From Ylistrum balloti (taxonomy: Eukaryota), in NCBI RefSeq assembly GCF_031769215.1, contig NW_026782081.1, positions 2,728,001 through 2,792,000 on the forward strand: 64,000 nt of DNA. Direction: 5' to 3'. Both the position numbers and the translations under genes were made by a program. Shown piece after piece: positions 34,718 through 64,000 of the stretch (position 1 is its first letter; each line of letters begins with the position of its first letter). The notes beneath the pieces were generated by a model. It saw only the letters and a program-made list of their open reading frames with translations. It was not told where the DNA came from and searched no databases.

Positions 34718-36285
34718 TCAACCGATGATATTTCCAGATTCCTCTCTATCACTGTCAATGAAAAAAGACAAAACATTACTTGAAAAATAAAACATCACAA
34801 TATCAAATCATGCTAACATTACACGAATAAAGATTGAGTTCGTAATTCCTACTGGACATGAAGTTAATACATAAGTTCTCTGGGGTATCACCTTTATAAG
34901 ATAAAGCTTAACGATGTACTGAATTGATAAGAATGTAATTTAATATACTGATAACAGTAACCCTGATAGCATCAAACGTTAAGAACATTTAAAGAAGACA
35001 AATAATTGATATCAGTGCTTCTAATATCTATGCAAACAATCTAGATATCTAATATATTATCTTACGTTTCTTGGCAAATGTAGTTGAGATGCAATTCGCA
35101 ATCATCATCCGCCATTAGAAATCCACCTCTACCCCAGAGATTCATGCAGTTGCCACCTTGTGCGTTGTTTGGTTCGCCGTCAGCCCAGGCAGTGTAGGTA
35201 AGCTTATCTCCTGTTATCGCCCATCTCCATACGTTTTCTACTTCAAGGTCTGTACCATCTATCCAATACTGCACGTGAGGTGCATCTAAAGGAAACGAAA
35301 CCTTTAATTCGTCAATCAATACATCTAGCGAAGATGAGGATTTGAATTCGTGGATAAATGTACCGGACGAAACTAATTATTTATTCATAACCTAAATTCA
35401 CCGGTATCTGAGTTTTCTAGTAAGCTAGATCCATTTTGTTATGGTAGGGCAGAGCAGCTGCGTCGACCAATCCAATGGGGTGACAATGTCTATTCTTAAT
35501 CATCACTTAATATTGACGTAGTTTTGGGCAACAGGCTTAAGTTTATATAAGTCCTCTCCATAAGGCAGATAAACGGTTACATTAAATAAAGTACATATGA
35601 TCACACATTCACTGATTTATAGATAATATTAGTATAAGCTCCTATCTTGTTAAATTAAAGATATTAAATTGTTGAAATTTTTTTTAATAAAAATATGGTT
35701 TGAATAAGAAAACAGAGTCGATGTCTTAATGTCTAAAGAAGAATATATCGTGTTTGTGACCTATAATAAATGATAACTTAGATAGGTACCATTTTGATGA
35801 AGTTGATTAAGTTCACCAGTCAGGAAGGTTTGCTCCATGTCTGAAGTAATTACTGCCAGATGCGAATGAATTGCTAAACATGTTGCCTGAAGTAATATGA
35901 TAAACACTGATTACTAAATATATGTGGCAGTAGAATTGAAATCCCGAAGCTGAATTACATTCCCATAAAGCAAAGAGATTTATTTGCTCATCTATCGTAA
36001 ATAAATCGATTATCTTTTCAAGAAAAAAAAGGTATAAAACATGTATTTTCTTAGTTACGCGTGAAAAAATAAAGAAAGCGATAAAATTATTCTTTCTTAT
36101 CTACTAATGTATATCCCTAAACTGCGTAAGAACTCTTTTCTTTTGTTTTCTTTTTTATCAACGTTATAACAACTTTTTCACACTTTTCTTTTCTTTTCAA
36201 CATTTCGTATATTTCATGTTATTTGGTATTTTGTACTTTATGGCAGTTATAAAGAGCTTAAAAATACAATATTGGACATTTTTGC

Positions 36286-42500: not shown

Positions 42501-43936
42501 GCAGCCAAATGATCTTCTGACGATATATTTCACATTGCTTTATGTTCTTCTCTTTAATCAAATAAAACGCTGAAACTTGCCTTGACATTTTAACATTTTA
42601 CATCATACACAGGACAGGAAATTTGAATGCACTATTGAATATTATTCACATAAATGCTATTTAGCATAAAAGAATACAGGAATTCCAATGTGAAAATAAA
42701 CAATGATAAAAAACATCATTATAAAATCAATTGTGGCATGAAGAATATGCTACAAGTCCACTTGTAATGATATCAACTATAACATAGTTTACAGATCAAA
42801 GCTGAACCACTTTTAAAGCAAAACGAATACGAGTAAGTGAAATCAATGTAAGCTCCTGCGGATTTTGTACCGAATCTGTGGTCAGGAACATGAAAACATA
42901 CATCATCAGTGACTTTTAATAATTGATACGTTTATCAACATCTACACATATTCTTGTTTCAATGAAAAGAATTGTCGCTTCAGACATTGTATTTTTTTAG
43001 ATGCTTCAACGAAGCAATATTGGATTGATGGCAACGACCTCGAGATCGAAAATGTCTGGAGGTGGATAAAAACTGGACAGACTATTACCTTTACGGACTG
43101 GGCTCCTGGAGAACCTAATGCTGCCGAAAATGATAATTGCTTGAACCTTTGGGGAAAGAGTGGATTTCGCTACGCTGACAATCCTTGCGAAGAACATTAC
43201 AACTATGTGTGTGAAATNNNNNNNNNNNNNNNNNNNNNNNNNNNNNNNNNNNNNNNNNNNNNNNNNNNNNNNNNNNNNNNNNNNNNNNNNNNNNNNNNNN
43301 NNNNNNNNNNNNNNNNNNNNNNNNNNNNNNNNNNNNNNNNNNNNNNNNNNNNNNNNNNNNNNCGAGAAACGGCGACATTTCAGGGCCAAATTGAAAGAAC
43401 ACACAAAGGCAGGCCATGATGTCCTATTCATTACTGGACAGGAATATACGATTTCCAGATTATCGATGCAAGTGATTATCTTTCATGAACCCTTTCTGTG
43501 ACATCTCATAGTTTACTTAACTATATAACAATTTTAGCTAGTCTAAGATTAATAGAAAATATAGCTAAAATTGTACAATGCAATGCAAACATGATACAGA
43601 TAAATTTACAAACAGCATATTTAGATCCTAATGTCATTTTTGACGAGGACAATAATGCCGGTGAATGGCAGATATCTTTCCACTACAGAGTCAGTAAATA
43701 TCATCGAAATTGAAGGAAATCGGTCCCTATAATTAAGGAATGGATTGCGAAGTTTCCAGACTACCTTCATCGTACCTGTCAGTAGTAGTAGGTGTTATAT
43801 AACATTTAATACATGATGTTACATGTAATTTTCATTTCTGTCAGATAAAATAAGGGGGGGGATCAATCTTTATCAACATAGTATTTTGCTACTGTTTCAT
43901 TACAGAGATTCTGAGATGTCAGGGATTGTGGGATGA
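39502..43936 (+). CDS. Secreted C-type lectin L3 (~164 aa, EPN motif)
   Basis: Exons: 39502-39559 (MMKKLPLFVFVLISAIPYS), 40336-40424 (CRGGWIGFRESCYYLSHGVATWVEAG), 40686-40782, 43001-~43220 (WAPGEPNAAENDNC..YADNPC; last 3 nt fall in the N gap) and 43906-43936 (DSEMSGIVG*). Confidence 0.88.
43218..43362. other. Assembly gap (145 N)
   Basis: Run of n. Confidence 1.
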
Positions 43937-46289: not shown

Positions 46290-47420
46290 TCTATGCGAGG
46301 TACCAACGATCATTTGGTTAGACTTGAAACCTTTGTGCGTGAGGCTTTTCTAAAGAAGGAGCACTTGGTTGCTGTTTTCTTAAATTTGGAAAAGGCTTAC
46401 GACACAACATGGAAATACGGCATAATGAAAGATCTGCACGATATACGTATTAAAGGTAATCTACCAATTTTTATTTCAAATTTTCTATCAGATATAGTAT
46501 TTCAAGTCCGAAATGGAACGACCCTTTCCGATGTTCATCAACATCAAATCGGTGTACCACAACATAGCATTCTTTCGGTTATACTTATAATTAACAGTAT
46601 TGTCAAAACATTATCCCCTTCAATGGAGGGTGCTCTTTATGTCGATGACTTCATCTTATGCTATCGATTTAAGCATATGAATACTATCGAAAGACAACTA
46701 CAACAATGTTTGAAACGACTACAAGTTTTGGCAGATGAAAATGGTTTTAAATTTTGACAATCAAAACAATTTGTATACATTTTTGTCAAATTCGGAAACA
46801 ACACGACGATCAAAATCTGTTTCTCTGTGGTGCACCCATTCCGGTTATTGAGCAAACGAAATTCTTAGGTGTAATATTCGACAGGAAATTGTCGTTCCTT
46901 CCACACATAAAATACCTTAAAGCCAAATGCCTTAAGGCACTGAATATTCTAAAGGTTGTGTCCCACACTGGGGAGCTGAAAAGTTTTGCTAAGACTCTAT
47001 AGAGGCCATATTAGAACAGAAATTGGACTACGGTTCCAATGTGTATGGATCTGCTAGACCTTCATTTTTGAAATTATTAGACATTGTTCTTCACCAAGGT
47101 CTCAGACTCGCTTTTGGAGCTTTTAAGACCACATCTACAGCAAGCGAGAACGTTTTTATCGTAACATTACATGTCTAAAATCCCTTTTTGAAACTGTTGA
47201 GATTTGTAAAATTCTACATTACCTGAAAGATGTTGGTCTATAAAATAGACTTTAACGTACCATTTTAATATTTTGTGTTAACATACCCATTTAAGGTTTT
47301 TAACATTTCTTTTTTACCTTTTGGTTTGTTTAATGTTATTTCATTTTGGATCACTGTGTGTTTAACCGATGGCCCTAATGAATTTTTATGTGTTGACGTG
47401 CCCTGAAGAATATAATAATA
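46290..47420 (+). mobile_element. Internally deleted I-group LINE: RT fragment joined directly to the 3' end
   Basis: DHLVRLETFVREAFLKKEHLVAVFLNLEKAYDTTW..GVPQHSIL..LYVDDF..KFLGVIFDRKLSFLPHIKYLK..LDYGS..GAFKT. At ~47146 it jumps to sequence matching 16616-16890. Confidence 0.85.
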
Positions 47421-48489: not shown

Positions 48490-51400
48490 ATGGTTAATCT
48501 ACCTGTGTTAACATTTGTATTTATTTTAGCGATTCCATACTCAGGTAAGTGTGAAAATGTAGTGTTGTCTGCATCGATTTGTTTTATCGTTATTTGTCAA
48601 GAGATTGGTTTAGTGTCACAGCCTGATAATCTGAGTTTTGTCTAAGTAAGAGTTTTTGAATCTCTATGTTGGAATTTCAACTTCATTGTGTTCTATTCGC
48701 TTAGATCATGTAGCTATGTTTTCCACTCAAATCCCAATGTACACAAAAATCATCCTCGAATATAGACTCAACAAAAAAAGAAAGGTTAACATGTTTCCTT
48801 GGCGAATACCTGTAAATGAGAGAAAACAAAATGACGTTTGTGCAATATAAGAAAATGGTAATGTTTTACATTACAAAATCCAAGGGGGTTACCAAAATCA
48901 TTCAAGCGTGAAAGTCTGTATTAGCGAAAGAGCTGCACGAGGTTTTCTGCGACTAACTTGTATCTTCGCTTGAATTTCATAAACATTCAAACTGACAACT
49001 GTTCCTTAGGTCCTTAGGACTTAGAAATCACCGAATCTTGCTATCTATCAACTTTATCATTATGCCCCGGCTGTCACAAGTACAGAGAGAAAAGGCTGTA
49101 GGCATGATCCAGGCTGGGGAGTCTCGCCGTCGAGTTGCACGGCATTTTGTTTGCAGTGTTAATACAATTTGCCAGTTGGTAAGTCGTTTAAACCAAACTG
49201 GGTCAACATCCAATCTTCCCTGAAGCGGCCGACCCCGTAAACCGACCGCCAGGGATGACCGTCGTATACGATTGATACACTTGCGCAATCGATTCGTAGC
49301 CGCAGTAGAGACTACAAGGACATTGTTTGAGCGTCGTGTGTCTCCCCAAACAGTCCGCAACAGGTTAAGGGTCTACCAATTGAAAGCGCGGCGCCCCTTC
49401 ACTGGACCCAATTTGTTGCGACGTCATCGTAATAATCGGCGTAACTGGACCCGTGTTCACCGTCATTGGGCCTTACGACAATGGAACAATGTTCTGTTTT
49501 CAGATGAGTCCAGGTTTTGTCTGCAACACGGTGACGGAAGGCGCAGAGTGTGGAGGCGCCGAAGGGAGCGTTTTGCGAACTGCTGCGTCGCAGAACGGGA
49601 CCGCTTTGGCGGCGGAAGTGTAATGGTTTGGGGTGGTATTTGTGGGGGGACTTGGACCAAACTTGTTGAGTTAAATGGCAATTTAACAGGCATTCGATAT
49701 CGGGACAAAATTTTAAGACCAGTGGTTCTGCCATTCTTAAGATGCCATGATGTTGGCGCCATTTTTCAACAGGATAACGCACCAGCGCACACCAGTCGCG
49801 TCAGCAGAACTTTCTTGCAGCAAAATAACGTACAGGTGTTAGATTGGCCATCTAAATCACCTGATTTGTCACCGATTGAGCATGTCTGGGACATTCTTGG
49901 GCGACGCGTGAGAGAACGTCAAAATCAGCCGTCAAACTTGCAAGAGCTGGCCCAAGCCTTGATCGCTGAATGGAACAACATCTCTTTTCGAATTATTCGC
50001 CGATTTACGAGATCCATGCGACGACGCTGCAATGCTGTTTACTTCGCAAACGGTGGCAATACCCGTTACTATTGGTGTTACCTTTGAAATTGACTCCAAC
50101 GTCCTTTACAGTCAAATAAAATCAACTGAACGCAAAGTTTTATAATGAACCATGACTGCAGTTTTATCAGAATTTATCAATTATGTTATTCGTACATTAT
50201 TGGTAAGGATTTATGAAGGGGTTAATTAATTAATCACAGAATAAAGTAGTGTTACCTTTCTTTTTTTTGTTTAGTATATGTGTAAAAACATTTTGATTAG
50301 ATACGAAACCATGATTTCACGATATTTCGAGTAATTTTGTTGAGGTTTGTGTTAGGTATATGTTGTATTACAGCGGTTATAACGTTTGATGACTGAATTG
50401 TTCCACTTGTCTCATGACGGTGACAACAAAGTCGCTTATCCTACACATGACTGTTATACATAAACATGTTTTCAAAATAACTGCAAGATATTGTTAATAA
50501 CCTGGTTTAATTTAATCTTGTTGCCGGTGGTGTTCGGCGCAATGATATATATCCTTAAGCCAAAATAAGATGAACCAAATTAGTTTACCGAAAACTTTGT
50601 TAAGGTAACTTCAAATATAATCCATTCTTTTATTGTCTCCTATTAGGACCGAACAGGTTCATGTTAGGAATCTTCATTGAGGGAATGGAATCCAAAACTT
50701 AGTCAGGATGGATGTTTCACTAGTTGATATGCTGCGTGGAAACATGAGAATAAGTAATGGGTAACGTTGATGTTTATCGTAACCTATTAGTTTCAATATA
50801 TAATTCATAAATGGTCTATTAACAGCCGCCGTCCAGTGTAGAGGGGGATGGATTGGCTTCGAGGATTCATGTTACTATCTGTCTCACGGAGTCGCCACCT
50901 GGGCTGAGGCCGGAGTAAGTTTGAACAAATGCCGTAAATGAACGTGAATATGATAAATGCAAGACTCTTTGGAAATAGCTGCAATCTAAAAAGAGACAAA
51001 AATGTACAAGAATACTTTTTTTCCAAACAGGGTGTTTGTAAGATGCTTGGAGGCTTTCTAGCTATGATAGAAAGAGCAGACGAACTGACTTTTCTGAAAT
51101 CTGCGTTAAATAATCTCCATCATAATGGTAGGTATATGTGTAAACCTGAATGATATACGCTATTGGAGGTATTTCGCTAGGTATTGATACTTAACACCCA
51201 TTTCTAGAATTAAATTGTAACGATTACGCTAAAAGTAAAGAAAAATATGATTTATTTGTTTTAGATGCTTCAACGAAGCAATACTGGATTGATGGCAACG
51301 ACCTCGAGATCGAAAATGTCTGGAGGTGGATAAAAACTGGACAGACTATTACCTTTACGGACTGGGCTCCTGGAGAACCTAATGCTGCCGAAAACGATAA

Positions 51401-51889
51401 TTGCTTGAACCTTTGGGGAAAGAGTGGATTTCGCTACGCTGACAATGATTGCGAAGAACATTACAACTATGTATGCCAAATAAGGTATGCATAAACATAG
51501 CTGACAATGAACACTTTTATTCTTCACGCATTAAGATAGCTGTTTGGTTTTATCACTAACATCAGCGTTATATTTCAATGACGATGACAAATGACGGGAC
51601 AAAGCTCCGCAGAAGCACAGTCCATATTGTCAAGGTCTTTGAGGAAAACATTAATCAGAACCGCCGTTTGCTTATGTAAAATACAAGTCACTTGTTTCCT
51701 TTCTTCATCAATCAAATAAAACGTAGCTGGTATTTTACATAGCTTTATAACATGTATGTTACTTGCTTTTATAAGTTTTTAGCAGCAGTTATTCGATAAA
51801 AGTTAAGAAATCAATATTTTTGTACCAACTCAGTATTTTTGCCATTGTATCATTTCAGAGATCCTGAAGAAACTGAAATTGTTGGATGA
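48490..51889 (+). CDS. Secreted C-type lectin L4 (163 aa, EPN motif; paralog of L3)
   Basis: Exons: 48490-48544 (MVNLPVLTFVFILAIPYS), 50826-50914, 51031-51127, 51265-51484 (WAPGEPNAAENDNC..YADNDC) and 51859-51889 (DPEETEIVG*). Confidence 0.9.
48763..50276 (+). mobile_element. Tc1-family DNA transposon (~1.5 kb) in L4 intron 1
   Basis: Imperfect terminal inverted repeats (left actcaacaaaaaaagaaaggttaaca; right tgttacctttcttttttttgtttagt), flanked by TA dinucleotides, enclosing a transposase frame. Confidence 0.9.
49062..50087 (+). pseudogene. Tc1 transposase (DD34E) with a single premature stop
   Basis: MPRLSQVQREKAVGM (HTH)..LP*SGRPRK..FSDESRF..VMVWGGI..FQQDNAPAH-34aa-SPDLSPIEHVW. TGA at 49221-49223 interrupts an otherwise continuous 341-codon frame. 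Confidence 0.92.
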
Positions 51890-52045
51890 TGACTGCCTTT
51901 ACCAAAAATAACATCGCTATAGAGAAATAAAAATAGAACAATATACAGCATATGAAGCTGTTCCGGTGACATTGTTTATATTTTAGTACATTAGCACATA
52001 ATTTCTTCTAAAAGCTCTCTTAAAATTACTTTTATACAATGCCGA

Positions 52046-52070
52046 TCTCTCTCTCTCTCTCTCTCTCTCT

Positions 52071-52110
<40 letters not shown>
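52046..52110. repeat. Compound microsatellite (CT)n(CA)n
   Basis: Directly visible between the 3' ends of L4 and L5. Confidence 0.95.
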
Positions 52111-52111
<1 letters not shown>

Positions 52112-52257
52112 CCCCCCACACACACAAACATAAAATAGTCTCAACTCTGAATGAATTGTTTATGTTTTGGTTTATTTAAAAATATCATAAAATTCGGTGT
52201 TGATACGTATTAATCAAGATTCATTTCCTGATCGCTTTGTCACGAACGAATTTTCCA

Positions 52258-55200
52258 TCATCCGATCACTTGGTCGCCCTCGCCATTGACGCTTCAATGA
52301 AATCAATTAATATGCCTTTTGATAAAAGCAAACAAGAAATCAATATACATATATACATATACAACAGCTATTTCATCCACTAAGTTATTATTATTGTATG
52401 TATGATATTCTTTCCAAATATCTCAAACCATATCTTTCTTTAAGTACAAAATATAGTTTATAATTTAAGAAATGAGCTGCTTCTTTTTCAATGCACATAA
52501 CCGTGCGCGGTACAGTCTGTACTACACGAAATTGAGCAATATCAAAATGTATATATACAATGATATTTTCTTTATATACATCAACAATAGATAGTAGTTA
52601 TAATAACCATGAATATGTATCACTGGTTGTAAATAAATAAGTTCAATATTCTTTTACAAGCTACTATGTTATCGTGTATTTGTTTAGATAGCGCAAATAC
52701 ACGTATATCACATTCATATATGTTTTTTTAATAAATAGATGAATCATCGATTTAAAGTACATGTATGCATAATAAATAACTAAGCTCATTTCGCAAAGGA
52801 AATTATATATACGTCTACAACCTTCATCAGCCCATTGATACGAGAAGTCTCTCCAAAGCACTAGGCAGTTCGCCGATGTTCCTGCATTGGGGTCATTACC
52901 TCCCCAGTCAGTAAAGGCAAGCTTGTCCCCATTTGAAGTCCAACGCCATACATTCTCTACCTCTAAATCGGTTCCATCTATCCAATACCCCACTAAAGTA
53001 TGAAATCGTAAGTGTAACAACATAATTTATGTATTTCCGAACAAAAAATTATATATCTACACTATGTTACTCTGCTTCTTTGGATCGTTACCGTAAGACC
53101 TCTTTCGTGACTGTTTTTATTCTCCTTTTGATTCTGACACGGCGTTGAAATCTTAACTGTGCTCATAAGTAGTTTTTTCCTACATATACTTGTGTATTTG
53201 TGAAACGCAAAAGAGTAGGATGATGTTTTATCTAGTCGTAAAACACTTATCTCAGTCGTGTTTACCACATCCTTCTTTATTTTGTACAATTTCATATTTT
53301 GGCTGTGGCTAAAAATTGAGCGCAATGAATATATTTCAAAGACTACTGGACTGGCGTGTGAAGAGTGTCAAACCTTTCTCTTATAAATAACTGAACAGCT
53401 AAACAAATCTGATGCGCACTTTTTTGTTTTGTTTGTTTTATTTAATCATAAAATTATGTAAGCTTTGTAATATGCAATACGTTTACTCGAAAACTTCGGT
53501 ATATCGGATCAATCTCAAATTGTAATAATCTTTGACAGATAAATTATTATTCGGTAATGTCAACACTGTTAGATATAATTCCGGTGTGGTGACAACAACT
53601 TTCGTTTTATAGAAATGTAAACTCTGCCTCTTACCAATGTATTTTGTGCATTAAGTATCAAAGCGACAAGAGGGATTTGGAATTGTCATTGATTCACATC
53701 TGCTGGCCTATATTAATGGAATAATGAAGAAAACAACCTGCATTAAAACGATGTGCCTCCGCCTTCAAGAAGGTATTCTCAGCAGTGGACTCAAGAATGG
53801 CAAGATGGCTGTGCAGATCCGTACACATAATCTGAAATGTATAGTTTGGCGGAACATATCCAAACAAATAATCTGGAATATTAAGTTGGCCGACCAGATC
53901 CGTATAAATAATCTGGAATATTTAGTTGTCCGACCAGATCCATATAAATAATCTTAAATATATAGTTGGCCGACCAGATCCGTACAAATAATCTGGAATA
54001 TTTAGTTGTCCGACCAGATCCGTATAAATAATCTGGAATATTTAGTTGTCCGACCAGATCCATATAAATAATCTTAAATATATAGTTGGCCGACCAGATC
54101 CGTACAAATAATCTGGAATATTTAGCTTGGCCGATCAGATCCGTATAAATAATCTGGATATTTAACGTAGCCGACCAGATCCGTATAAATAATCTGGAAT
54201 ATTTAGTTGGCCGAGCAGACCCGTACAAATAATCTGAAATATTTTGTTTGGCCGAGCAAATACTTATAATTAATTTTAAATATTTAGCTTAGCCTAGCAG
54301 ATCCGTACAAATAATCTGGATTATTTAGTTTGGCCGAGCAGATCCTTATAATTGATTTTAAATATTTGGTTTAGCCAGGCAGATCCGTACAAATTATCTG
54401 AAATATTTAGTATGGCCGAGCAGATCCGTATAGATAATCTGAAATATTAAGTTGACAGAGCAGATCCGTACAAATTATCTGAAAGGTATAGTTGGTCGTG
54501 CAGATCCGTACAAATATGTTTTGTTCCAAAAACAATCTCTCACCATTGTATGTCTCAACAACAGCTTCACACGCAATTAAATTAGGCAATTCAATTATAT
54601 TTAGAACCATGGTGAGCATACATTAGCGGTCAAAAAACATATAAATCAACATTAAGAGTCACACTGAAGTTATGTGATACAATGGACTTTTCCGACTTGT
54701 ATCTGTTGGGTGAGGTAATTTAATAACACTAAATGTTTATTCATTAATTTCTAATAGTTTTCTTCTCTTCTTCAATTAAATATTATATTTTTACTTAAAG
54801 AATTATACTAAAAGGTTGAAAAATGAAATCAAATGGAATTATATGAGAAATAGATTTAAGTAGTTGTCTCCCCTACTTCAGCATTCTGATTTATTTATGT
54901 TTGTATATGTTCAAGTGTCTAATTTTGTATGCCTATGTTTGTACCACTGTTTGTTACCATATTTGGAGAGGGCTTAAATAGGCTATGACGGCTGCCCAAT
55001 CCATTTGTCAATTTGACAATAAAATTTGTTGAAATTGAGTCACAGGGAAGTTGCTCGCAGTAGTTGTAAAGCTAGCCTAAGTAAACACTGGATGAATGGA
55101 TACATGCATACATCCCTAATGCTGCATATGTGTAACGCCATCGGGTGTGAAACAGTTCAGTCAAAATGGTTTTCACAAATTGTCACTATCCGAACTCAAA

Positions 55201-57680
55201 TTAATAGGAAATAAGAAAATAGAAACTGTTAGAAAAAAACTTATGAAAGACTTCGTTATCCAATGAGAAAATGCGAATTTTCTTTCACATATAAGCATGT
55301 GTAGCCGGTAAAATATTAAAACGGTGAACGATGACAGAATCTTGACAGGGAAGCAGTGATAACAAAGGTTATAGTGTTTAACGACATCTGGTCTTTTTTA
55401 ATTATCAATGAATCACATACCGATGCTTCAGCCCAAGTTTCTGCGTCCTTCGAGAAAAAGTAGCAAGAATTTTCAAATCGTACCCATCCGTTTCTGCAAC
55501 CAGTTGCTGAAGATAAAACACGTTTTAAAGGTACAATCTAAATATGCATTTCAAAATTCAGCATTTTCATTAAATTTTACGACATATAATGAAAAAGTAC
55601 ATATAAATTATCTACACTTTTTTGTCAGAATTTTATGTTGTTGATTTACTGATATATATTATTGCGCCTGCACTACATTACGATAGCCGATTAGTACACA
55701 TTAGATTGAAAAAAGCTCGTTATTTCGGCTTACGTCATCTTGGTATTATGAATTAAATTGATTGGTGATTACGAGCTACACTATCTCGCTATTACGAGCC
55801 ATGTCGTATCGTTATTACGGTTTAAGATATCTCGTTACAAAGAGTAAAGTGATCTTGTCATTAAAGCTGTAGCTATTTCGTTATATTAACATACGTCATG
55901 TGTTTTTGCTGTGATTTCATTATAGATTCTTAATTTCCAGTGTCATGATAAGACTATTGGATAATAGTATATAAATATATAAAGGAAATACATTATATCA
56001 CAATATAATGACATACATTAACACAGTATATTTCAATACAATAACTTACTAATGCATATTCAATACTACGCTGTGCGTTATGGGCTAAACCAAATTACTA
56101 TATCAGATAGAAATATAAAGGAAAACATATTTTTGTAATATGATATTTGAAATATAATCAATGTCTTTAGTTACATCAACTCAATTTCACTATTGAGGCT
56201 GGAATTTTTAAATATCTCCTGACTGCATATTCTGTTTATTATATCAAAAAACTACCACGGATTGCAAAGCGACAACCCATATGTGAATATATGCATATGT
56301 TTATACTTTAAATACTTTTAATAAAGTACGCCAAAATTTCTATCAAGACCTTTGTTATTTGGGAAACGTCTCTACATATCAACTCAATCACAGCATGTGT
56401 TTGATGTTTTGAAACACCGAATCTACAATGGTTGGATGTATAATAATGTAGAAAATGAAGAACGGTTTTTATCACTTATACTGAACTTTTTACTTTCACT
56501 TTCAGATGTTGTCTAATTCAAATTTTAAATTTATATATATATATATATTGTTCTGGCAGAAGACTTATATAGGCTCTAGCCCGCTGTCTAATCATATTGA
56601 TTATTTTTATCAAAAAAATATTCTGAAATCAAAAATGTTGTGACGCAGTAAGGATCAAGAGTGCAGAGCCCGTATATTACCGTGAAATAACTAATAAAAC
56701 AGAACTCCATTTACACATGTGTGCATACTTATTGGACAAACTATCAATATGAGTCATTTACTTATGATCACTTTTACTTTGGTCCTTCAACTGCCTTGGT
56801 AACGGTAAAGCTAGATGAATTCGTAATAACGCAGTAACTTGACTTTTAGCAACGAGATAATGCAACTCTTAATTACGAGATCATAAAGTCGTAACAATGA
56901 TATTGCACAACTTTTTATAACGAGATGACGCAAGTAGTATTAACTGGATTTCTTTTTTGAGTTAAGATATGGTACTTATCGGCGTTTTTAATTTTCAATG
57001 ATTTAATCTGTATCGAGGTTTAGGTCCCCAACGAGTATTTAACCAATCTTCGACGACCTTTTTAAATAATTCTTTTGTAAGAACTTTACTTTTTATCCCA
57101 TTTGGGACAGCATCATGTCCCCATTCTTAGAGGATTGATCACCGTCCTTCTTCATTTTCCAAGAAAGGTGGACAACGGCTGTATTGTTGTAATAAGGAAA
57201 TGACGTGACTCGTAATAACGATAATAATGTATATTTGTAAAGTATATTTTAGCATATATTGTAAGAAATGCATTAAAATTAAAGAGGTAATATACAGAGG
57301 ACGAAAGCATAAAGCGGACCAGGTCGACAATACCATTGTCAAGTAAAGTGGTAAAATCTCACAACAGGCTAATGGAAACAAACTTTGACTCTCTTTGTTG
57401 ACATGAGTTCATCTAAACGAGTATCAAAGATCTTAAAGAAAATCTTCAATTCACCTACAAATCATTTGATGACGACATGTCATTGAATAATAAAATAGTT
57501 ATGAATTATGTTTATCTTTAATACCAACCAGAATATCAAATTAACGACAAGACACACTGTTCTTTATCATCCACTTAAAATTATTCTTTCATTGCAAGAT
57601 TTTCTGTACTTACCTTGTATTGCGGCTGGTTGTAATGTCAAGCAATAACAAAAGACCACCGTATTCCATAAGACCTTCAT
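52258..57680 (-). CDS. Secreted C-type lectin L5 (162 aa, DPN loop; exon-4 donor mutated)
   Basis: Exons: 57680-57614 (MKVLWNTVVFCYCLTLQPAAIQ), 55506-55421 (CRNGWVRFENSCYFFS..TWAEAS), 53831-53738 (IMCTDLHSHLAILE), 52992-52785 (WGGNDPNAGTSANC..WADEGC) and 52291-52258 (VNGEGDQVIG*). The exon-4 donor reads CT instead of GT. Confidence 0.82.
53814..54514. repeat. 40-41 bp minisatellite (~18 units) overlapping the L5 exon-3 acceptor
   Basis: Unit gcagatccgtacaaataatctggaatatttagttggccga; the central part has a 120-bp higher-order period (53941-54000 is identical to 54061-54120). Confidence 0.95.
54656..55044 (+). mobile_element. L5-specific ~380-bp segment flanked by an 8-bp direct repeat; possible truncated retroelement 3' end
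   Basis: GAGTCACA occurs at 54656-54663 and 55037-55044. L6 has a single copy and no insert. The insert ends in caataaaatttgttgaaatt. Confidence 0.5.
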
Positions 57681-58870
57681 GATGGAAGAAACCTTTTCCT
57701 ACTGCAGTTTACACAGATAATATTTACACCAATACGTACACAACAAATGCCTTGAGAAATGACATATGTGAAAGCCAACGCACGAATACACAAAACCTGA
57801 CACACATGAAAGATAAGAAATAATAGTGATACAAAAAAAGTGCCACATTTTAATAAAATAAAAAGCAACAGATTTTCAATTCAATCTCAAATTCGAGAAA
57901 ACGAGGATAAGATACGATCAAAATATCTTTAACAAAAACTCTTGATATGATATGAATGGTTGCTAATTTATATATTTTTTTTCAATTGAATTTGTTTCTT
58001 AGTTAAGTATTTATAAGGTAAGAAAGCTACATTAAAGTACTATCATGAGAACGTCATCATAATCCAACCTCATATTCAATAAAACTAAGGTAAAATATGA
58101 AAAAAAAAGAAAACGAACACAAGACACTTTAGAAAAAAAACGAAAAGTGTAGTCAGCGTCTTCTTCTTTATCGATGACAAATACAATAAAAATATTTTTC
58201 AATCCAAGCAAATTATGTTACGTGCCTAAATAAGAATACGGTACAATGAAAATAACGGTATCACCAAGTTCAGTAACGAGCGCAAAATACGTCCAATTTC
58301 ATATCACGCGAGAAAGTACAACATTCCTAACAAGCTCTTTAGAGCAACCATAAAGCTTTCCAGTATTATATGTCCAACTGAATCTACAGAAATTCTGTAT
58401 CGTTGTTCGTTTGATAGCGAGTTGCCGATATCTTGCAAGGACTTCGTGATGCTGGGAAAATATTTTCAAAAGATACGCAAGTAAATAGCATCTTTAATAG
58501 GAATTTAGAGTAGAGCCACACAATGAATTAAACTGTACCACATAATCTAGATTTAGAAGCCTAGGAGAGGACTGAGGAAAATTCGCAGGATCAAAACAAT
58601 TGCCTTAATCTAGATGTCATGGTGCATTAGCCCAATAACTTAATAATTACTTAATTTTCATGTATCTGACAATTTTAGAAGAACGCAAAGCATATTGTCT
58701 ATTCTGAACCGTGGTACTATACGAATAAATTGATACGCGACATGCAAGTTACGGCAAATACCAGGAGACTTATTATTCACGAGCGGAGTGCAAGGCCAGC
58801 AATGTCGAAGATTGCACAAAAATACACACAGTTGAATAGTATCTAATAATCAGATAAAATAAGATACGGT

Positions 58871-59105
58871 NNNNNNNNNNNNNNNNNNNNNNNNNNNNNN
58901 NNNNNNNNNNNNNNNNNNNNNNNNNNNNNNNNNNNNNNNNNNNNNNNNNNNNNNNNNNNNNNNNNNNNNNNNNNNNNNNNNNNNNNNNNNNNNNNNNNNN
59001 NNNNNNNNNNNNNNNNNNNNNNNNNNNNNNNNNNNNNNNNNNNNNNNNNNNNNNNNNNNNNNNNNNNNNNNNNNNNNNNNNNNNNNNNNNNNNNNNNNNN
59101 NNNNN
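58871..59105. other. Assembly gap (235 N) between the L5 and L6 units
   Basis: Run of n. Confidence 1.
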
Positions 59106-59216
59106 CTGAATGCATTGTTTGTGTTTTGGTTTATTTAAAAATATCGTAAAATTCGGTGTTCATACGTATTAATCAAGACTCATTTCCTGATCACTTTGTA
59201 ACGAACGAATATTCCA

Positions 59217-62200
59217 TCATCCGATCACTTGGTCGCCCTCGCCATTGACGCTTAAATGAAATCAATTAATATGCCGTTTGATAAAAGCCAACAAGAAATC
59301 AATATACATATACAACAGCTATTTCATACACTAAGTTATTATTATTGCATGTATGATATTCTATCCATATATCTCAAGCCATAACTTTCTTTAAGTACAA
59401 AATATAGTTTAGAATTTAAGAAATGAGCTGCTTCTTTTTCAATGCACATAATCGTGCGCTGTAAAGTCTGTACTACACGAAATTGAGCAATATCAAAATG
59501 TATATATACAATAATATTTCCTTTACATACATCAACAATAGATAGTAGTTATAATAACCATGAATATGTATCACTGGTTGTAAATTAATAAGTTCAATAT
59601 TCTTTTACAAGCTACTATGTTATCGTGTATTTGTTTAGATAGCGCAGATACACGTATATCACATTCATATATGCTTTTTTTAATAAATAGATGAATCATC
59701 GATTTAAAGTACATGTATACAATATAAATAACTAACCTCATTTCGCAAAGGAAGTTATATATACGTCTACAACCTTCATCGGCCCATTGATACGAGAAGT
59801 CTCTCCAAAGCACTAGGCAGTTCGCCGTTGTTCCTTGATTGGGTTGAGAACTTCCCCAGTCAGTAAAGTCAAGCTTGTCCCCATTTGAAGTCCAACGCCA
59901 TACATTCTCTATCTCTAAATCGGTTCCATCTATCCAATATCCCACTAAAGTATGAAATCGTAAGTGTAACAACATAATTTATGTATTTCCGAACAAAAAA
60001 TTATATATCTACAATATGTTAATCTGCTTCTTTGGATCGTTACCGTAAGACCTCTTTCGTGACTGTTTTTATTCCCCTATTGATTCTGACACGGCGTTGA
60101 AATCTTAACTGTGCTCATTAGTAGATTTTTCTACATATACTTGTATATTGTGAAACGCAAAAGAGTAGGATGATGTTTTATCTAGTCGTTAAACGCTCAT
60201 CTCAGTCGTGTTTACCACATCCTTCTTTATTTTGTACAATTTCATATTTTGGCTGTGGCTATAAATTGAGCGCAATGAATATATTTCAAAGACTACTGGA
60301 CTGGCGTGTGAAGAGTGTCAAACCTTTCTCTTATAAATAACTGAACAGCTAAACAAATCTGATGCGCACTTTTTTGTTTTGTTTGTTTTATTTAATCATA
60401 AAATTATGTAAGCTTTGTAATATGCAATACGTTTACTCGAAAACTTCGGTATATCGGATCAATTAAATCTCAAATTGTAATAATCTTTGTCAGATAAATT
60501 ATTATTCGGTAATGTCAACACTGTTAGATATAATGCCTGTGTGGTGACAACAACTTTCGTTTTATAGAAATGTAAACTCTGCCTCTTACCAATGTATTTT
60601 GTGCATTTAGTATGAAAGCGACAAGAGGGATTTGGAATTGTCATTGATTCACATCTGCTGGCCTTTATTAATGGAATAATGAAAAACAACCTGCATTTAA
60701 ACGACGTGCCTCCGCCTTCAAGAAGGTATTCTCAGCAGTGGACTCAAGAATGGCAAGATGGCTGTGCAGATCCGTACACATAATCTGAAATGTATAGTTT
60801 GGCGGAACATATCCAAACAAACAATCTGAAATATATAGTTGTCCGAACAGATCCGTACAAATAATCTGGAAAATTTAGTTGGCCGAGCAGATCCGTACAA
60901 ATAATCTGAAAGAAATAGTTTGGCAGTGCAGCTCCCTTACAAATAATCTGAAATGTTGATTGGCCGATCAGCTCCGTACAAATAATCTGAAATAGATGTT
61001 TTGGCAGTGCAGCTCCCTTACAAATGATCTGAAACGTTGATTGGCCTAGCAGATCCGTACACATAATCTGAAATGTATAGTTGGCCGTGCAGATCCAAAC
61101 AAATATGTTTTGTTCCAAAAACAATCCTATCTCTCACCATTGCATGTCTCAACAGCAATTTAGAAAAATGATGAGCATACATTAGCGGTCAAAAAACATA
61201 TAAAACACAACACTTTATAGAGTCACAGGGAAGTTGTTCGCAGTAGTTGTAAAGATAGCCTAAGTAAAAACTGGATGAATGGATACATTCATACATCCCT
61301 AATGCTGCATATGTGCAACGCCATCGGATGTGAAACAGTTCAGTCAAAATGGTTTTCACAAATTGTCACTATCCGAACTCAAATTAATAGGAAATAAGAA
61401 AGTAGAAACTGTTAGGAAAAAACTTATGAAAGACTTCGTTATCCAATGAGAAACGGCGAATTTTCCTTAACATATAAGCATGTGTACCCGGTAAAATATC
61501 TAAACGGTGAACGATAACAGAATTTTGACAGGGAAGCAGTGATAACAAAGGTTATAGTGTTTAACGACATTTGGTCTTTTTTAATTATCAATGAATCACA
61601 TACCGATGCTTCTGCCCAAGTTTCTGCGTCCTTCGAGAAAAAGTAGCACGAATTTTCAAATCGTACCCATCCGTTTCTGCAACCAGTTGCTGAAGATAAA
61701 ACACGTTTTAAAGGTACAATCTAAATATGCATTTCAAAATTCAGCATTTTCATCAAATTTTACGACATATATTGAAAAAGTACATATAAATTATCTACAC
61801 TTTTTTGTCAGAATTTTATGTTGTTGATTTACTGATAAATATTATTGCGCCTGCACTACATTACGATGGCCGATTAGTACACATTGGATTGAAAAAAAGC
61901 TCGTTATTCCGGCTTACGTCATTTTGGTATTATGAATTAAATTGATTGGTGATTACGAGCTACACTATCTCGCTATTACGAGCCATGTTGTATCGTTATT
62001 ACGGTTTAAGATATCTCGTTACAAAGAGTAAAGTGATCTCGTCATTAAAGCTGTAGCTATTTCGTTATATTAACATACGTCATCATGCGTTTTTGCTGTG
62101 ATTTCATTATAGATTCTTAATTTCCAGTGCCATGATAAGACTATTGGATAATAGAGGAAACAGAATGATACATATACAATGTTACACACCATAAATGTAC

Positions 62201-63925
62201 AACGAATACAATATAATCATACAATGTATATAAATGAAATACATTATATCACAATAACATGACATACATTAACACAGTATATTTTAAAACAATAACTTAC
62301 TAATGCATATTCAAAACTACGCTGTGCGTTATGGGCTAAACCAAATTACTATATCAGACAGAAATATAAAGGAAAACATATTTTTGTAATATGAAATTTG
62401 AAATATAATCAATGTCTTTAGTTACATCAACTCAATTTCACTATTGAGGCTGGAATTTTAAAATATCTCTTGACTGTATATTCTGTTTATAATATTAAAA
62501 AAAACTACCACGGATTACAAAGCGACAACCCATATGTGAATATGTTTATACTTTAAATACTTTTGATAAAGTACGCTAAAATTTCTATCAAGACCTTTGT
62601 TATTTTGGAAACGTCTCTTCATATCAACTCAATCACAGCATGTGTTTGATATTTTGAAACTCCGAATCTACAATGGTTGGATGTATAATAATGTAGAAAA
62701 TGAAGAACGGTTTTTACCACTTATACTGAACTTTTTATTTTCACTTTCAGATGCTGTCTAATTCAAATTTTAAAATTTGATATATATATATTGTTCTGGC
62801 AGAAGACTTATATAGGCTCTAGACCGCTGTCTAATCATATTGATTATTTTTATCAAAAAAATATTCTGAAATCAAAAATGTGACGCAGTAAGGAACAAGA
62901 GTGCAGAGCCCGTATATTACCGTGAAATGACTGATAAAACAGAACTCCATTTACATATGTGTGCATACTTATTGGACAAGCTATCAAGAGGAGTCATTTA
63001 CATATGAACACTTTTACTTTGGTCCTTCGACTGCCTTGGTAACGGTAAAGCTAGCTTATTCGTAATAACGAAGTAACTTGACTTTTAACAACGAGATAAT
63101 GCAACTCTTAATTACGAGATCATGAAGTCGTAATAATGATATTGCACAACCATTTATAACGAGATGATGCAAGTAATACTTATTAGATTTCTTTTTATTG
63201 AATTAACATATGGTACCTATCGGCGTTTTTAATTTTCAATTATTTAATCTGTATCGAGGTTTAGGTCCTCAACGAGTATTTAACCAACCTTCGACGACCT
63301 TTTTAAATAATTCTTTTGTAAGAACTTTATTTTTATCCCATTTGGGACAGCAACATGTCCCCATTCTTAGAGGATAGATCGCCGTCCTTCTTCATTTTCC
63401 AAGAAAGGTGGACAACGGCTGTATTGTTGTAATAAGGAAATGACGTGACTCGTAATAACGATAATAATGTATAATTGTAAAGTATATTTTAGCATATATT
63501 GTAAAAAGAAATGCATTGAAATTAAAGAGGTAATATACAGAGGACGAAAGCATAAAGCGGACCAGGTCGACAATATCATTGTCAAGTTAAGTGGTAAAAT
63601 CTCACAACAGGCTAATGGAAACAAACTTTGAACCTATCTTGGTTGACATGAGTTCATCTAAACGAGTATCAAAGATCTTACAGAAAATCTTCAATTCACC
63701 TATAAATCATTTGATGACGACATGTCATTAAATAATAAAATAGTTATGAATTATGTTTATCTTTAATACCAACCAGAATATCAAATTAACAACAAGACAC
63801 ACTGTTCTTTATCATCCACTTAAAATTATTCTTTCATTGCAAGATTTTCTGTACTTACCTTGTATTGCGGTTGGTTGTAATGTCAAGCAATAACAAAAGA
63901 CCACCGTATTCCATAAGACCTTCAT
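59217..63925 (-). CDS. Secreted C-type lectin L6 (162 aa, QPN loop; near-identical paralog of L5)
   Basis: Exons 63925-63859, 61689-61604, 60784-60691, 59944-59737 (WGSSQPNQGTTANC..WADEGC) and 59250-59217; all junctions canonical. Confidence 0.9.
60766..61104. repeat. 40-41 bp minisatellite (~9 units) overlapping the L6 exon-3 acceptor
   Basis: Same unit as 53814-54514, with its own variants (ggcagtgcagctcccttacaaat). Confidence 0.93.
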
Positions 63926-64000
63926 GATGGAAGAAACCTTTTCCTACTGCAGTTTACACAGATAATATTTACACCAATACGTACACAACAAATGCCTTGA

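What the first reader, a model, noticed from the sequence alone, without database searches (positions are those of the whole stretch)
52874..52900. L5 vs L6: substitutions pile up, all non-synonymous, in the sugar-binding loop
Counted by eye: exon 4 has 13 differences in 208 nt, and 8 fall in one 27-nt stretch (GGT AAT GAC CCC AAT GCA GGA ACA TCG vs AGT TCT CAA CCC AAT CAA GGA ACA ACG; GNDPNAGTS vs SSQPNQGTT; L6 59826-59852). All 8 are amino-acid changing. Exon 2 has only 2 silent differences, and introns are ~95% identical. Established: this loop carries the EPN/QPD specificity residues. Inference: diversifying selection, or a patch conversion from another lectin, retuning specificity right after duplication. 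If L5/L6 are really alleles, this would be balanced polymorphism.
Basis: partly seen in the sequence, partly recalled or inferred. Interest (0 to 1): 0.7.

Follow-up and report, generated by a model that had tools for sequence, protein, structure and literature searches.

The report
Scallop lectin twins differing at sugar loop
Two nearly identical copies of a small secreted scallop lectin gene differ mainly in the loop that should contact sugar, a familiar pattern in immune lectins, and the two "copies" may be the two parental versions of one gene placed side by side by the assembler.

Summary
The window comes from the saucer scallop Ylistrum balloti. L5 and L6 are five-exon "perlucin-like" C-type lectin genes on the minus strand. 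Exon 4 (208 nt) has 13 differences, 8 of them in 52874-52900 (L6 59826-59852), and all 8 change amino acids (GNDPNAGTS vs SSQPNQGTT). The stretch aligns with the EPN motif of paralogues: L5 has DPN and L6 has QPN.

- **Direction:** Pecten and Argopecten orthologues show that L6 is the changed copy (5 of 8 sites L6-derived, none L5-derived).
- **Donor:** no donor exists in the 648-Mb assembly.
- **Constraint:** the rest of the protein is constrained (pN/pS 0.25).
- **Clustering:** P=0.005 by mismatches. Counted as events, P=0.20 over the whole unit, because an intron holds an equally dense cluster. Within coding sequence P=0.008.
- **Spectrum:** seven of the eight changes are transversions and two are adjacent doublets.

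Two caveats apply. Copy 1 ends and copy 2 begins exactly at a 235-N gap, and both outgroup scallops have one gene there, so L5/L6 may be unmerged haplotypes (about even odds). L5 has also lost the conserved exon-4 splice donor (GT to CT).

Earlier notes of this scan report similar motif switches in other lectin duplicates of this genome. This is a moderate example of a known pattern.

The parts
52874..52900 (-). L5 sugar-loop codons GNDPNAGTS (DPN at the EPN position). This is the ancestral-like state.
   Evidence: It matches the Pecten orthologue (GGHDPN) at most polarised sites.
59826..59852 (-). L6 sugar-loop codons SSQPNQGTT (QPN). This is the derived state.
   Evidence: Of the 8 sites, 5 are L6-derived, 0 are L5-derived and 3 are ambiguous or unresolved. 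Seven of the 8 changes are transversions.
52785..52992 (-). L5 exon 4 (C-terminal half of the lectin domain, 208 nt)
   Evidence: Pfam Lectin_C scores 30.4 bits on this exon alone.
59737..59944 (-). L6 exon 4
   Evidence: Pfam Lectin_C scores 28.8 bits.
52783..52784 (-). L5 exon-4 splice donor reads CT instead of GT (the +1 G is replaced by C)
   Evidence: Pecten has GAG|GTATGT, Argopecten GAG|GTAATT, L6 GAG|GTTAGT and L5 GAG|CTTAGT.
59735..59736 (-). L6 exon-4 splice donor GT, intact
57614..57680 (-). L5 exon 1, the signal peptide (MKVLWNTVVFCYCLTLQPAAIQ), which the NCBI model misses
   Evidence: It is similar to the N-termini of the Mizuhopecten, Pecten and Argopecten orthologues, and the donor is G|GTAAGT.
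63859..63925 (-). L6 exon 1, the signal peptide, with one replacement (A>T)
55421..55506 (-). L5 exon 2 (L6: 61604-61689), with 2 silent differences
53738..53831 (-). L5 exon 3 (L6: 60691-60784), with 2 replacements (H>R, F>L)
52258..52291 (-). L5 exon 5 coding part (L6: 59217-59250). In the conserved phase it encodes the tail S-VNGEGDQVIG-stop.
   Evidence: The tail matches the orthologue tails ending in VIG, VVG or AIG.
52147..58870 (.). Duplicated unit, copy 1. It ends at the last base before the N gap.
58871..59105 (.). Assembly gap of 235 N lying exactly between the two copies
59106..64000 (.). Duplicated unit, copy 2. It starts at the first base after the gap and runs 1095 bases past the window end.
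52043..52128 (.). (CT)n(CA)n microsatellite about 20 bp left of copy 1. The matching position of copy 2 falls in the gap.

Best explanation
L5 and L6 are two 95-96% identical versions of one small secreted, single-domain C-type lectin gene ('perlucin-like') of Ylistrum balloti. The gene has five exons: a signal peptide, the lectin domain in three exons, and a short conserved tail.

Shown: one version, L6, has undergone a lineage-specific burst of 8 nucleotide and 5 amino-acid changes within 9 codons of the long loop that carries the EPN-equivalent residues. This turned an ancestral DPN-type loop into a QPN-type loop. The rest of the protein stayed under purifying selection.

Inferred: the burst probably arose from a few multi-nucleotide mutation events, or from a short conversion by a donor that is not in this assembly. 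It was probably kept because it alters which sugars or microbial surfaces the lectin binds. If the copies are paralogues this is divergence in ligand specificity. If they are haplotypes it is functional allelic polymorphism.

Shown: the version with the old loop, L5, has lost the conserved exon-4 splice donor. It cannot make the conserved C-terminal tail in the normal way and may be decaying.
For: - **Family and position:** Pfam Lectin_C scores 57 bits on the L5 protein, and both exon-4 translations score above the cut-off. D/Q align with the E of EPN in ten relatives.
- **Polarity:** with the Pecten and Argopecten genes as outgroups, 5 of 8 loop sites are L6-derived and none is L5-derived.
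- **Constraint elsewhere:** pN/pS is 0.25 outside the loop. Inside it Nd is 8 on 20.3 sites, against 5 synonymous changes on 89.3 sites gene-wide (Fisher P=2e-4, uncorrected).
- **Not just a loose loop:** among four scallop orthologues the loop is no more variable than the rest of the domain (7/9 vs 62/117 columns, P=0.14). L5 vs L6 is 5/9 vs 4/116 (P=6e-5).
- **Clustering:** P=0.005 by mismatches over the unit, and P=0.008 by events or P=0.004 by amino acids within coding sequence.
- **Spectrum:** 7 transversions to 1 transition against 97:96 in the background (P=0.04), plus two adjacent doublets.
- **L6 integrity:** L6 has all splice sites, and its exon lengths add up to 162 codons, like the orthologues' 160-162 aa.
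- **Literature:** QPN is a recurrent, functional motif in bivalve lectins. MmCTL4 (QPN/WSD), for example, binds mannose and xylose but not galactose (PMC12842671).
Against: - At the event level the loop ties with an intronic cluster, and the whole-unit P is 0.20, so dense clusters arise here without selection.
- The 8:0 non-synonymous to synonymous split is only P=0.10.
- There are no binding, expression or population data.
- By motif spacing, both copies and all orthologues lack two of the five canonical site-2 calcium ligands (Ala at the E193-equivalent position, WAD instead of WND). Sugar binding by the classical mode is therefore unproven for either copy. This is inference from the alignment; the structure model was unusable.
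- 'After duplication' is uncertain because the duplication may be an assembly artefact.
Confidence: 0.45

Rival explanations
1. L5 and L6 are not paralogues. They are the two haplotypes of a single gene whose diverged contig ends were not merged and were scaffolded end to end across a gap (a false 'heterotype' duplication). This question is separate from what caused the loop burst. If it is true, the difference is an allelic polymorphism in one animal, not divergence after duplication.
For: - Copy 1 (52147-58870) ends at the last base before the 235-N gap. Copy 2 starts at the first base after it and continues 1095 bases beyond the window.
- Pecten maximus and Argopecten irradians each have one gene of this type within +-10 kb, in gap-free sequence. 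The Pecten locus also has neighbouring lectins in the matching orientations.
- Exon 4 occurs only twice in the assembly.
- The protein database holds a protein only for L5.
- A gap between duplicated pairs on one scaffold is listed as a primary mark of false duplications and was not found for true ones (PMC9516828).
- The only other gap in the window also abuts a 96.5% identical duplicate.
Against: - Non-coding divergence of 3.6% and pS of 5.6%, plus large indels, are high for alleles, although not unheard of in bivalve immune loci. That comparison rests on my general knowledge.
- The gap has a specific positive length (235 N).
- The position matching copy 1's microsatellite falls in the gap. 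A true tandem duplicate with a microsatellite at the junction would break an assembly in the same way, and that would also explain why copy 1's contig stops in non-repetitive sequence.
- I could not see read depth.
Confidence: 0.5
2. The burst is a neutral accident. One or a few clustered multi-nucleotide mutations, or a micro-conversion, hit a tolerant surface loop and drifted, with no change in function worth selecting.
For: - An intron-1 site (about 56935-56945) has about 5 substitutions in 12 bp, and 56920-56966 has 6 events per 27 nt.
- There are 12 adjacent multi-base substitutions in the unit, 2 of them in the loop.
- The transversion bias suggests an unusual mutational process.
- The changed positions are ones that also vary among orthologues. 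The invariant P, N and Cys are untouched.
- The canonical calcium site looks incomplete in the whole orthologue group.
Against: - The densest cluster of raw mismatches outside the minisatellite falls on 27 nt that make up about 0.5% of the unit and encode the ligand loop. The rest of the coding sequence is depleted in replacements (pN/pS 0.25).
- The loop change between L5 and L6 equals the whole between-genus divergence at that loop.
Confidence: 0.3
3. The patch was copied by gene conversion from another lectin gene present in this genome.
For: Two lectins just upstream of L6 (C224:2794258 and 2799036) and the syntenic Pecten neighbour carry QPN loops. Conversion is common in tandem lectin arrays (general knowledge).
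Against: - No second match to either 27-mer within 3 mismatches, and none to the 21-mer L6 core within 2 mismatches above the control rate, in 648 Mb.
- The QPN neighbours share only CAACC with L6 at the DNA level.
- Local k-mer sharing is at chance level.
Confidence: 0.07
4. The loop difference is a sequencing or polishing error in one copy.
For: The region lies in a gap-adjacent, possibly misassembled stretch.
Against: There are eight substitutions and no indel. The frame and the invariant Pro, Asn and Cys are kept. The result is a motif (QPN) that is common in bivalve lectins.
Confidence: 0.03

Closest known systems
Perlucin-like single-domain C-type lectins of scallops (NCBI models from Pecten maximus, Argopecten irradians and Mizuhopecten yessoensis; P0002-P0004)
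   Same: They share 59-69% identity, the same exon phases and donor position, a signal peptide, six cysteines, a WAD motif and a short tail ending in (V/I)(I/V)G. The locus is syntenic within a lectin cluster.
   Different: The outgroups have one gene where this assembly shows two. L6's SSQPNQGTT loop is not seen in any of them. L5 has a broken exon-4 donor.
EPN/QPD motif switching in C-type lectins (the mannose-binding protein A paradigm) and motif-variant bivalve lectins such as AiCTL5, MmCTL4 and VpClec-4 (QPN)
   Same: The change sits at the first residue of the tripeptide that, in canonical lectins, binds calcium and the sugar hydroxyls. QPN is a known bivalve variant with measured sugar binding (PMC12842671).
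   Different: Here the switch is DPN to QPN, not EPN to QPD. DPN and WAD are not mentioned in that review. Two of the five canonical calcium ligands appear to be absent, so the classical binding mode is not assured.
False heterotype duplications in assemblies of heterozygous genomes (Ko et al. 2022, PMC9516828)
   Same: Two diverged copies lie adjacent on one scaffold with an assembly gap exactly between them.
   Different: Read depth, k-mer multiplicity and read-pair discordance, the other defining marks, could not be examined here.

Membership tests
C-type lectin-like domain (Pfam PF00059 Lectin_C) | Profile match above the curated cut-off | tested here: met
   P0001 (L5) scores 57.2 bits against a cut-off of 22.6. 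The L5 and L6 exon-4 translations alone score 30.4 and 28.8 bits.
C-type lectin-like domain (Pfam PF00059 Lectin_C) | Conserved cysteine framework (four core Cys plus the N-terminal pair of long-form domains) and the WIGL-like core | tested here: met
   Alignment A1 has C120, C136, C144, W81 and D83/G84 invariant. C21, C32 and C49 are present in L5, L6 and the orthologues.
Calcium-dependent carbohydrate-recognition domain (canonical site 2: EPN/QPD, Glu, WND) | Tripeptide E/Q-P-N/D in the long loop | tested here: inconclusive
   L6 has QPN, a variant known in sugar-binding bivalve lectins. L5 has DPN, which the review does not mention. The Pro and Asn are invariant.
Calcium-dependent carbohydrate-recognition domain (canonical site 2: EPN/QPD, Glu, WND) | Acidic residue two positions before the Cys, and the Asn of WND | tested here: not met
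   By motif spacing in A1, both copies read ...S/T-A-N-C and W-A-D. The equivalence to the mannose-binding protein ligands comes from my knowledge of that family and was not checked on a structure, because the model was unusable.
Calcium-dependent carbohydrate-recognition domain (canonical site 2: EPN/QPD, Glu, WND) | Measured calcium-dependent sugar binding | not testable with these tools
   This needs recombinant protein and glycan assays.
Tandem paralogue pair (true gene duplication) | Both copies present on one haplotype, shown by spanning reads and diploid depth | not testable with these tools
   No reads were available. The copies are separated by an N gap.
Tandem paralogue pair (true gene duplication) | Two copies in related species or elsewhere | tested here: not met
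   There is a single copy in Pecten maximus and in Argopecten irradians within +-10 kb. This fits a very recent duplication as well as an artefact.
Site under positive or diversifying selection | Replacement rate in the loop above the neutral rate after correcting for the choice of window | tested here: inconclusive
   P=0.005 by mismatches but P=0.20 by events over the whole unit. P=0.008 and P=0.004 within coding sequence. N vs S within the loop gives P=0.10.

The most novel reading that the evidence does not exclude
L5 and L6 are two haplotypes of one gene, and the sugar loop is a balanced polymorphism. An old-type DPN allele, here also carrying a splice-donor loss, and a remodelled QPN allele are kept in the scallop population by pathogen-driven selection. 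That would be an MHC-like allelic recognition system in an invertebrate lectin.
Probability: 0.1. Interest if true: 0.6.

Novelty: new member of a known kind. Interest (0 to 1): 0.3.

Why it matters
If the loop change really retunes binding, this pair is a compact natural experiment. The two proteins differ at ten residues in the first four exons, five of them in the ligand loop, plus the C-terminal tail that L5 can no longer make normally. It could show how bivalve immune lectins acquire new specificities. The practical lesson for this genome is a caution. Young 'duplicates' that straddle N gaps may be haplotypes, so counts of lectin gene expansion and claims of post-duplication selection need read-depth support. 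The annotated L5 protein is also mis-modelled, with no signal peptide and a frameshifted tail.

Tried and rejected
- **Donor search:** both 27-mers (3 mismatches or fewer), the 21-mer L6 core (2 or fewer), exon-4 DNA and the exon-4 protein were searched against the whole assembly, and local 9- to 12-mers against 74 kb. No donor was found.
- **Neighbouring QPN lectins as donors:** rejected on codon comparison.
- **Structure:** the AlphaFold2 model of P0001 from a 12-sequence alignment had pLDDT below 50 over residues 83-136, the very region of interest. It was not used, and no fold search was run.
- **PDB sequence search:** it only confirmed the family. The printed alignments did not include a well-characterised single-domain lectin, so the ligand equivalences rest on motif spacing.
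- **Assembly-wide gap test:** I did not try to get round this. The loci already held contain only the window's two gaps.
- **Exact-protein look-ups:** P0001 and the Mizuhopecten protein P0004 returned nothing, so there was no Mizuhopecten DNA for polarisation.
- **Literature and earlier notes:** no paper on the Y. balloti nuclear assembly is in the library. A word search of the scan's notes for gap or haplotype artefacts returned nothing.
- **Joined model:** the joined, spliced L6 or corrected L5 protein was not searched or folded, because no reference exists for a joined model. All work was done exon by exon.
- **DGR-like mutagenesis:** considered in thought only. The changes are not adenine-specific, so the idea was dropped.
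Full report
**Source and layout**

The window is G000:C224:2,728,001-2,792,000 of a 648.5-Mb assembly with about 33% G+C. A word search with the exon-4 open frame returned one protein, NCBI 'perlucin-like [Ylistrum balloti]' (P0001, 173 aa). It is encoded on a contig of 3,659,541 bp, the same length as C224. The genome is therefore the saucer scallop, not human and not prokaryotic.

| Gene | Exon-4 coordinates | Strand | Motif at the EPN position |
|---|---|---|---|
| L1 | 29848-30051 | - | EPN |
| L2 | 35071-35274 | - | EPN |
| L3 | 43018-43215 | + | EPN |
| L4 | 51282-51479 | + | EPN |
| L5 | 52790-52996 | - | DPN |
| L6 | 59742-59948 | - | QPN |

Canonical exon 4 (L5 52785-52992, L6 59737-59944, 208 nt) has 13 differences, and 8 of them fall in 52874-52900 / 59826-59852. 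They sit in five codons: GGT>AGT, AAT>TCT, GAC>CAA, GCA>CAA and TCG>ACG, giving G>S, N>S, D>Q, A>Q and S>T. The Nei-Gojobori count for the nine codons is 8.0 non-synonymous and 0 synonymous. Exon 2 has two silent differences. Ungapped non-coding columns differ at 3.6% (179/4972).

**Gene model**

I mapped P0001, compared it with the orthologues and obtained five exons.

| Exon | L5 | L6 | Content |
|---|---|---|---|
| 1 | 57614-57680 | 63859-63925 | signal peptide, donor G\|GTAAGT |
| 2 | 55421-55506 | 61604-61689 | lectin domain |
| 3 | 53738-53831 | 60691-60784 | lectin domain |
| 4 | 52785-52992 | 59737-59944 | lectin domain, sugar loop |
| 5 (coding part) | 52258-52291 | 59217-59250 | conserved tail |

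- The exon lengths add up to 162 codons, like the 160-162 aa orthologues.
- The NCBI L5 model lacks exon 1.
- It also ends in an unrelated 27-residue tail in place of the conserved 11-residue one.
- The reason for the odd tail is visible in the DNA. The conserved phase-2 donor after ...TGC GAA ATG AG reads GT in Pecten, Argopecten and L6 but CT in L5.
- Both copies still encode the conserved tail (S-VNGEGDQVIG-stop) in exon 5 in the proper phase.
- L6 looks fully intact. L5 has a lesion at an invariant splice position.
- I did not search or fold a joined spliced model, because a joined sequence has no reference. All searches were exon by exon.

**What the loop is**

Pfam Lectin_C matches P0001 (57 bits) and each exon-4 translation. 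In an alignment with ten relatives, the D of L5 and the Q of L6 align with the E of EPN. The following Pro and Asn and the downstream Cys are invariant.

One caveat comes from motif spacing. L5, L6 and their orthologues have Ala where canonical domains have the second acidic calcium ligand, and they have WAD instead of WND. Classical calcium-dependent sugar binding is thus not assured for either copy. The ligand equivalences are from my knowledge of mannose-binding protein. I could not verify them, because the structure model was unusable there. A recent review lists QPN in many bivalve lectins, some with measured sugar binding, and does not mention DPN or WAD (PMC12842671).

**Which copy changed**

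The loop sequences are as follows.

| Gene | Loop |
|---|---|
| Pecten maximus orthologue | GGHDPNEATH |
| Argopecten irradians orthologue | GGQEPNAGES |
| Mizuhopecten yessoensis orthologue | HSGEPNQGAS |
| L5 | GGNDPNAGTS |
| L6 | GSSQPNQGTT |

With Pecten and Argopecten DNA as outgroups (loci L038 and L039), 5 of the 8 loop sites are L6-derived, none is L5-derived and 3 are ambiguous or unresolved. Elsewhere in exons 2-4, L6 gained H>R, V>I, A>D and one silent change, and L5 gained L>F and one silent change. The burst therefore belongs to L6.

**How unusual it is**

- Outside the loop pN/pS is 0.25, which indicates purifying selection. Overall pS is 0.056 and pN is 0.037.
- Loop replacements per site (8 of 20.3) exceed synonymous changes per site gene-wide (5 of 89.3; P=2e-4) and the non-coding rate (P=3e-7), both before correcting for the choice of window.
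- Scan-statistic permutations for 8 or more mismatches in 27 nt give P=0.005 over the unit and P=0.0003 within coding sequence.
- Adjacent multi-base substitutions are common here: 12 runs in the unit, two of them in the loop.
- Counting each run as one event, the loop has 6 events and ties with an intron-1 cluster at 56920-56966, which is real substitution and not misalignment. The P values are then 0.20 over the whole unit, 0.008 within coding sequence and 0.004 at the amino-acid level.
- The 8:0 split alone gives P=0.10.
- Among the four orthologues the loop is not significantly more variable than the rest of the domain (7/9 vs 62/117 columns, P=0.14). L5 vs L6 is 5/9 vs 4/116 (P=6e-5). L6 has changed in this loop as much as whole genera differ.
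- The spectrum is odd, with 7 transversions to 1 transition against 97:96 in the background (P=0.04).

**No donor**

- Neither 27-mer recurs within three mismatches anywhere in the assembly.
- The 21-mer L6 core, with two mismatches or fewer, matches only itself and one place at or below the control rate.
- Exon-4 DNA matches only L5, L6 and weakly L2.
- The two QPN lectins just upstream of L6, and the syntenic QPN neighbour in Pecten, share only CAACC with L6.
- Local k-mer sharing is at chance level.

Conversion from a gene present in this assembly is therefore effectively excluded. A donor on an unsampled haplotype cannot be excluded.

**Paralogues or haplotypes**

*For a false duplication:*
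- The repeat is 52147-58870 against 59106-64000 plus the next 1095 bases. Copy 1 ends at the last base before the 235-N gap and copy 2 starts at the first base after it.
- Ko et al. 2022 list a gap between duplicated pairs on one scaffold as a primary mark of false heterotype duplications, and did not find it for true duplications (PMC9516828).
- Both outgroups have a single gene.
- Only L5 has a protein in the database.
- The window's other gap also abuts a 96.5% identical duplicate.

*For a true tandem duplication:*
- A true duplicate whose junction lies in the gap gives the same picture.
- Copy 1 has a (CT)n(CA)n microsatellite about 20 bp to its left, and the matching position of copy 2 falls in the gap. 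This would explain both contig ends.
- The gap has a specific positive length.
- A pS of 5.6% is high for alleles.

I could not see reads, and the assembly-wide gap test was blocked. I put the two possibilities at about even odds.

**Reading**

Shown:
- The burst is real and specific to the L6 lineage.
- It lies in the EPN-equivalent loop of an otherwise constrained perlucin-like lectin.
- There is no donor in the assembly.
- L5 has a lost splice donor.

Inferred:
- The burst arose from a few multi-nucleotide events or from an unsampled micro-conversion.
- It was retained because it changes ligand recognition.

A neutral cluster in a tolerant loop remains a serious rival. The pattern of young lectin duplicates differing at the sugar motif is familiar. 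Earlier notes of this scan report it at other places in this genome (s1-262776 and s1-258798). I did not test those notes.

Noticed in passing
window 52783-52784 (L5) vs 59735-59736 (L6): L5's conserved exon-4 splice donor is CT instead of GT. The NCBI L5 protein (P0001) therefore uses a cryptic donor 4 nt downstream and carries a frameshifted 27-residue tail in place of the conserved tail of about 11 residues ending in VIG.
   Followed up: yes
window 57614-57680 and 63859-63925: The signal-peptide exon of L5 and L6 is missing from the NCBI model, which starts with an unrelated MARNSEI exon at about 55782-55802. No L6 protein was found in the protein database.
   Followed up: partly
window 42986-43217 vs 51250-51481: The 96.5% identical block shared by L3 and L4 (the sugar-binding exon) ends exactly at the other N gap (43218-43362), and the sequence after that gap has no counterpart near L4. 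The reported 'homogenised exon' may therefore be an assembly problem and not gene conversion.
   Followed up: partly
window 56920-56966 (intron 1 of L5; L6 about 63160-63205): A dense cluster of real substitutions, about 5 in 12 bp and mostly transitions, lies in non-coding sequence. It is as dense in events as the lectin loop.
   Followed up: partly
window 53800-54516 and 54640-55032 (L5) vs 60755-61105 (L6): A minisatellite of about 81 nt in intron 2, derived from the 5' end of exon 3, has more repeats in L5 than in L6. About 390 bp present in L5 are absent from L6.
   Followed up: no
G000:C224:2794258-2794461 and 2799036-2799239 (just beyond the window); L038:6903-7106: The two lectin genes upstream of L6 have QPN loops (WAPYQPNNGNASNC and WGLNQPNNGNLSNC), as does the syntenic neighbour in Pecten maximus. 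A QPN lineage is therefore conserved next to this gene across genera.
   Followed up: partly
alignment A1, P0004 (Mizuhopecten): Two of L6's derived residues (Ser at the first changed position and Gln after PN) equal the state of the Mizuhopecten orthologue (SGEPNQG). This could be convergence on a limited set of allowed residues or an old variant. No Mizuhopecten DNA was available to check.
   Followed up: no
window 49272-50087 (+) and 46293-46757 (+): A 271-aa open frame that looks like a Tc1/mariner-type transposase, and a fragment that looks like a reverse transcriptase, lie between L3 and L4. Both were judged by eye from the translations.
   Followed up: no
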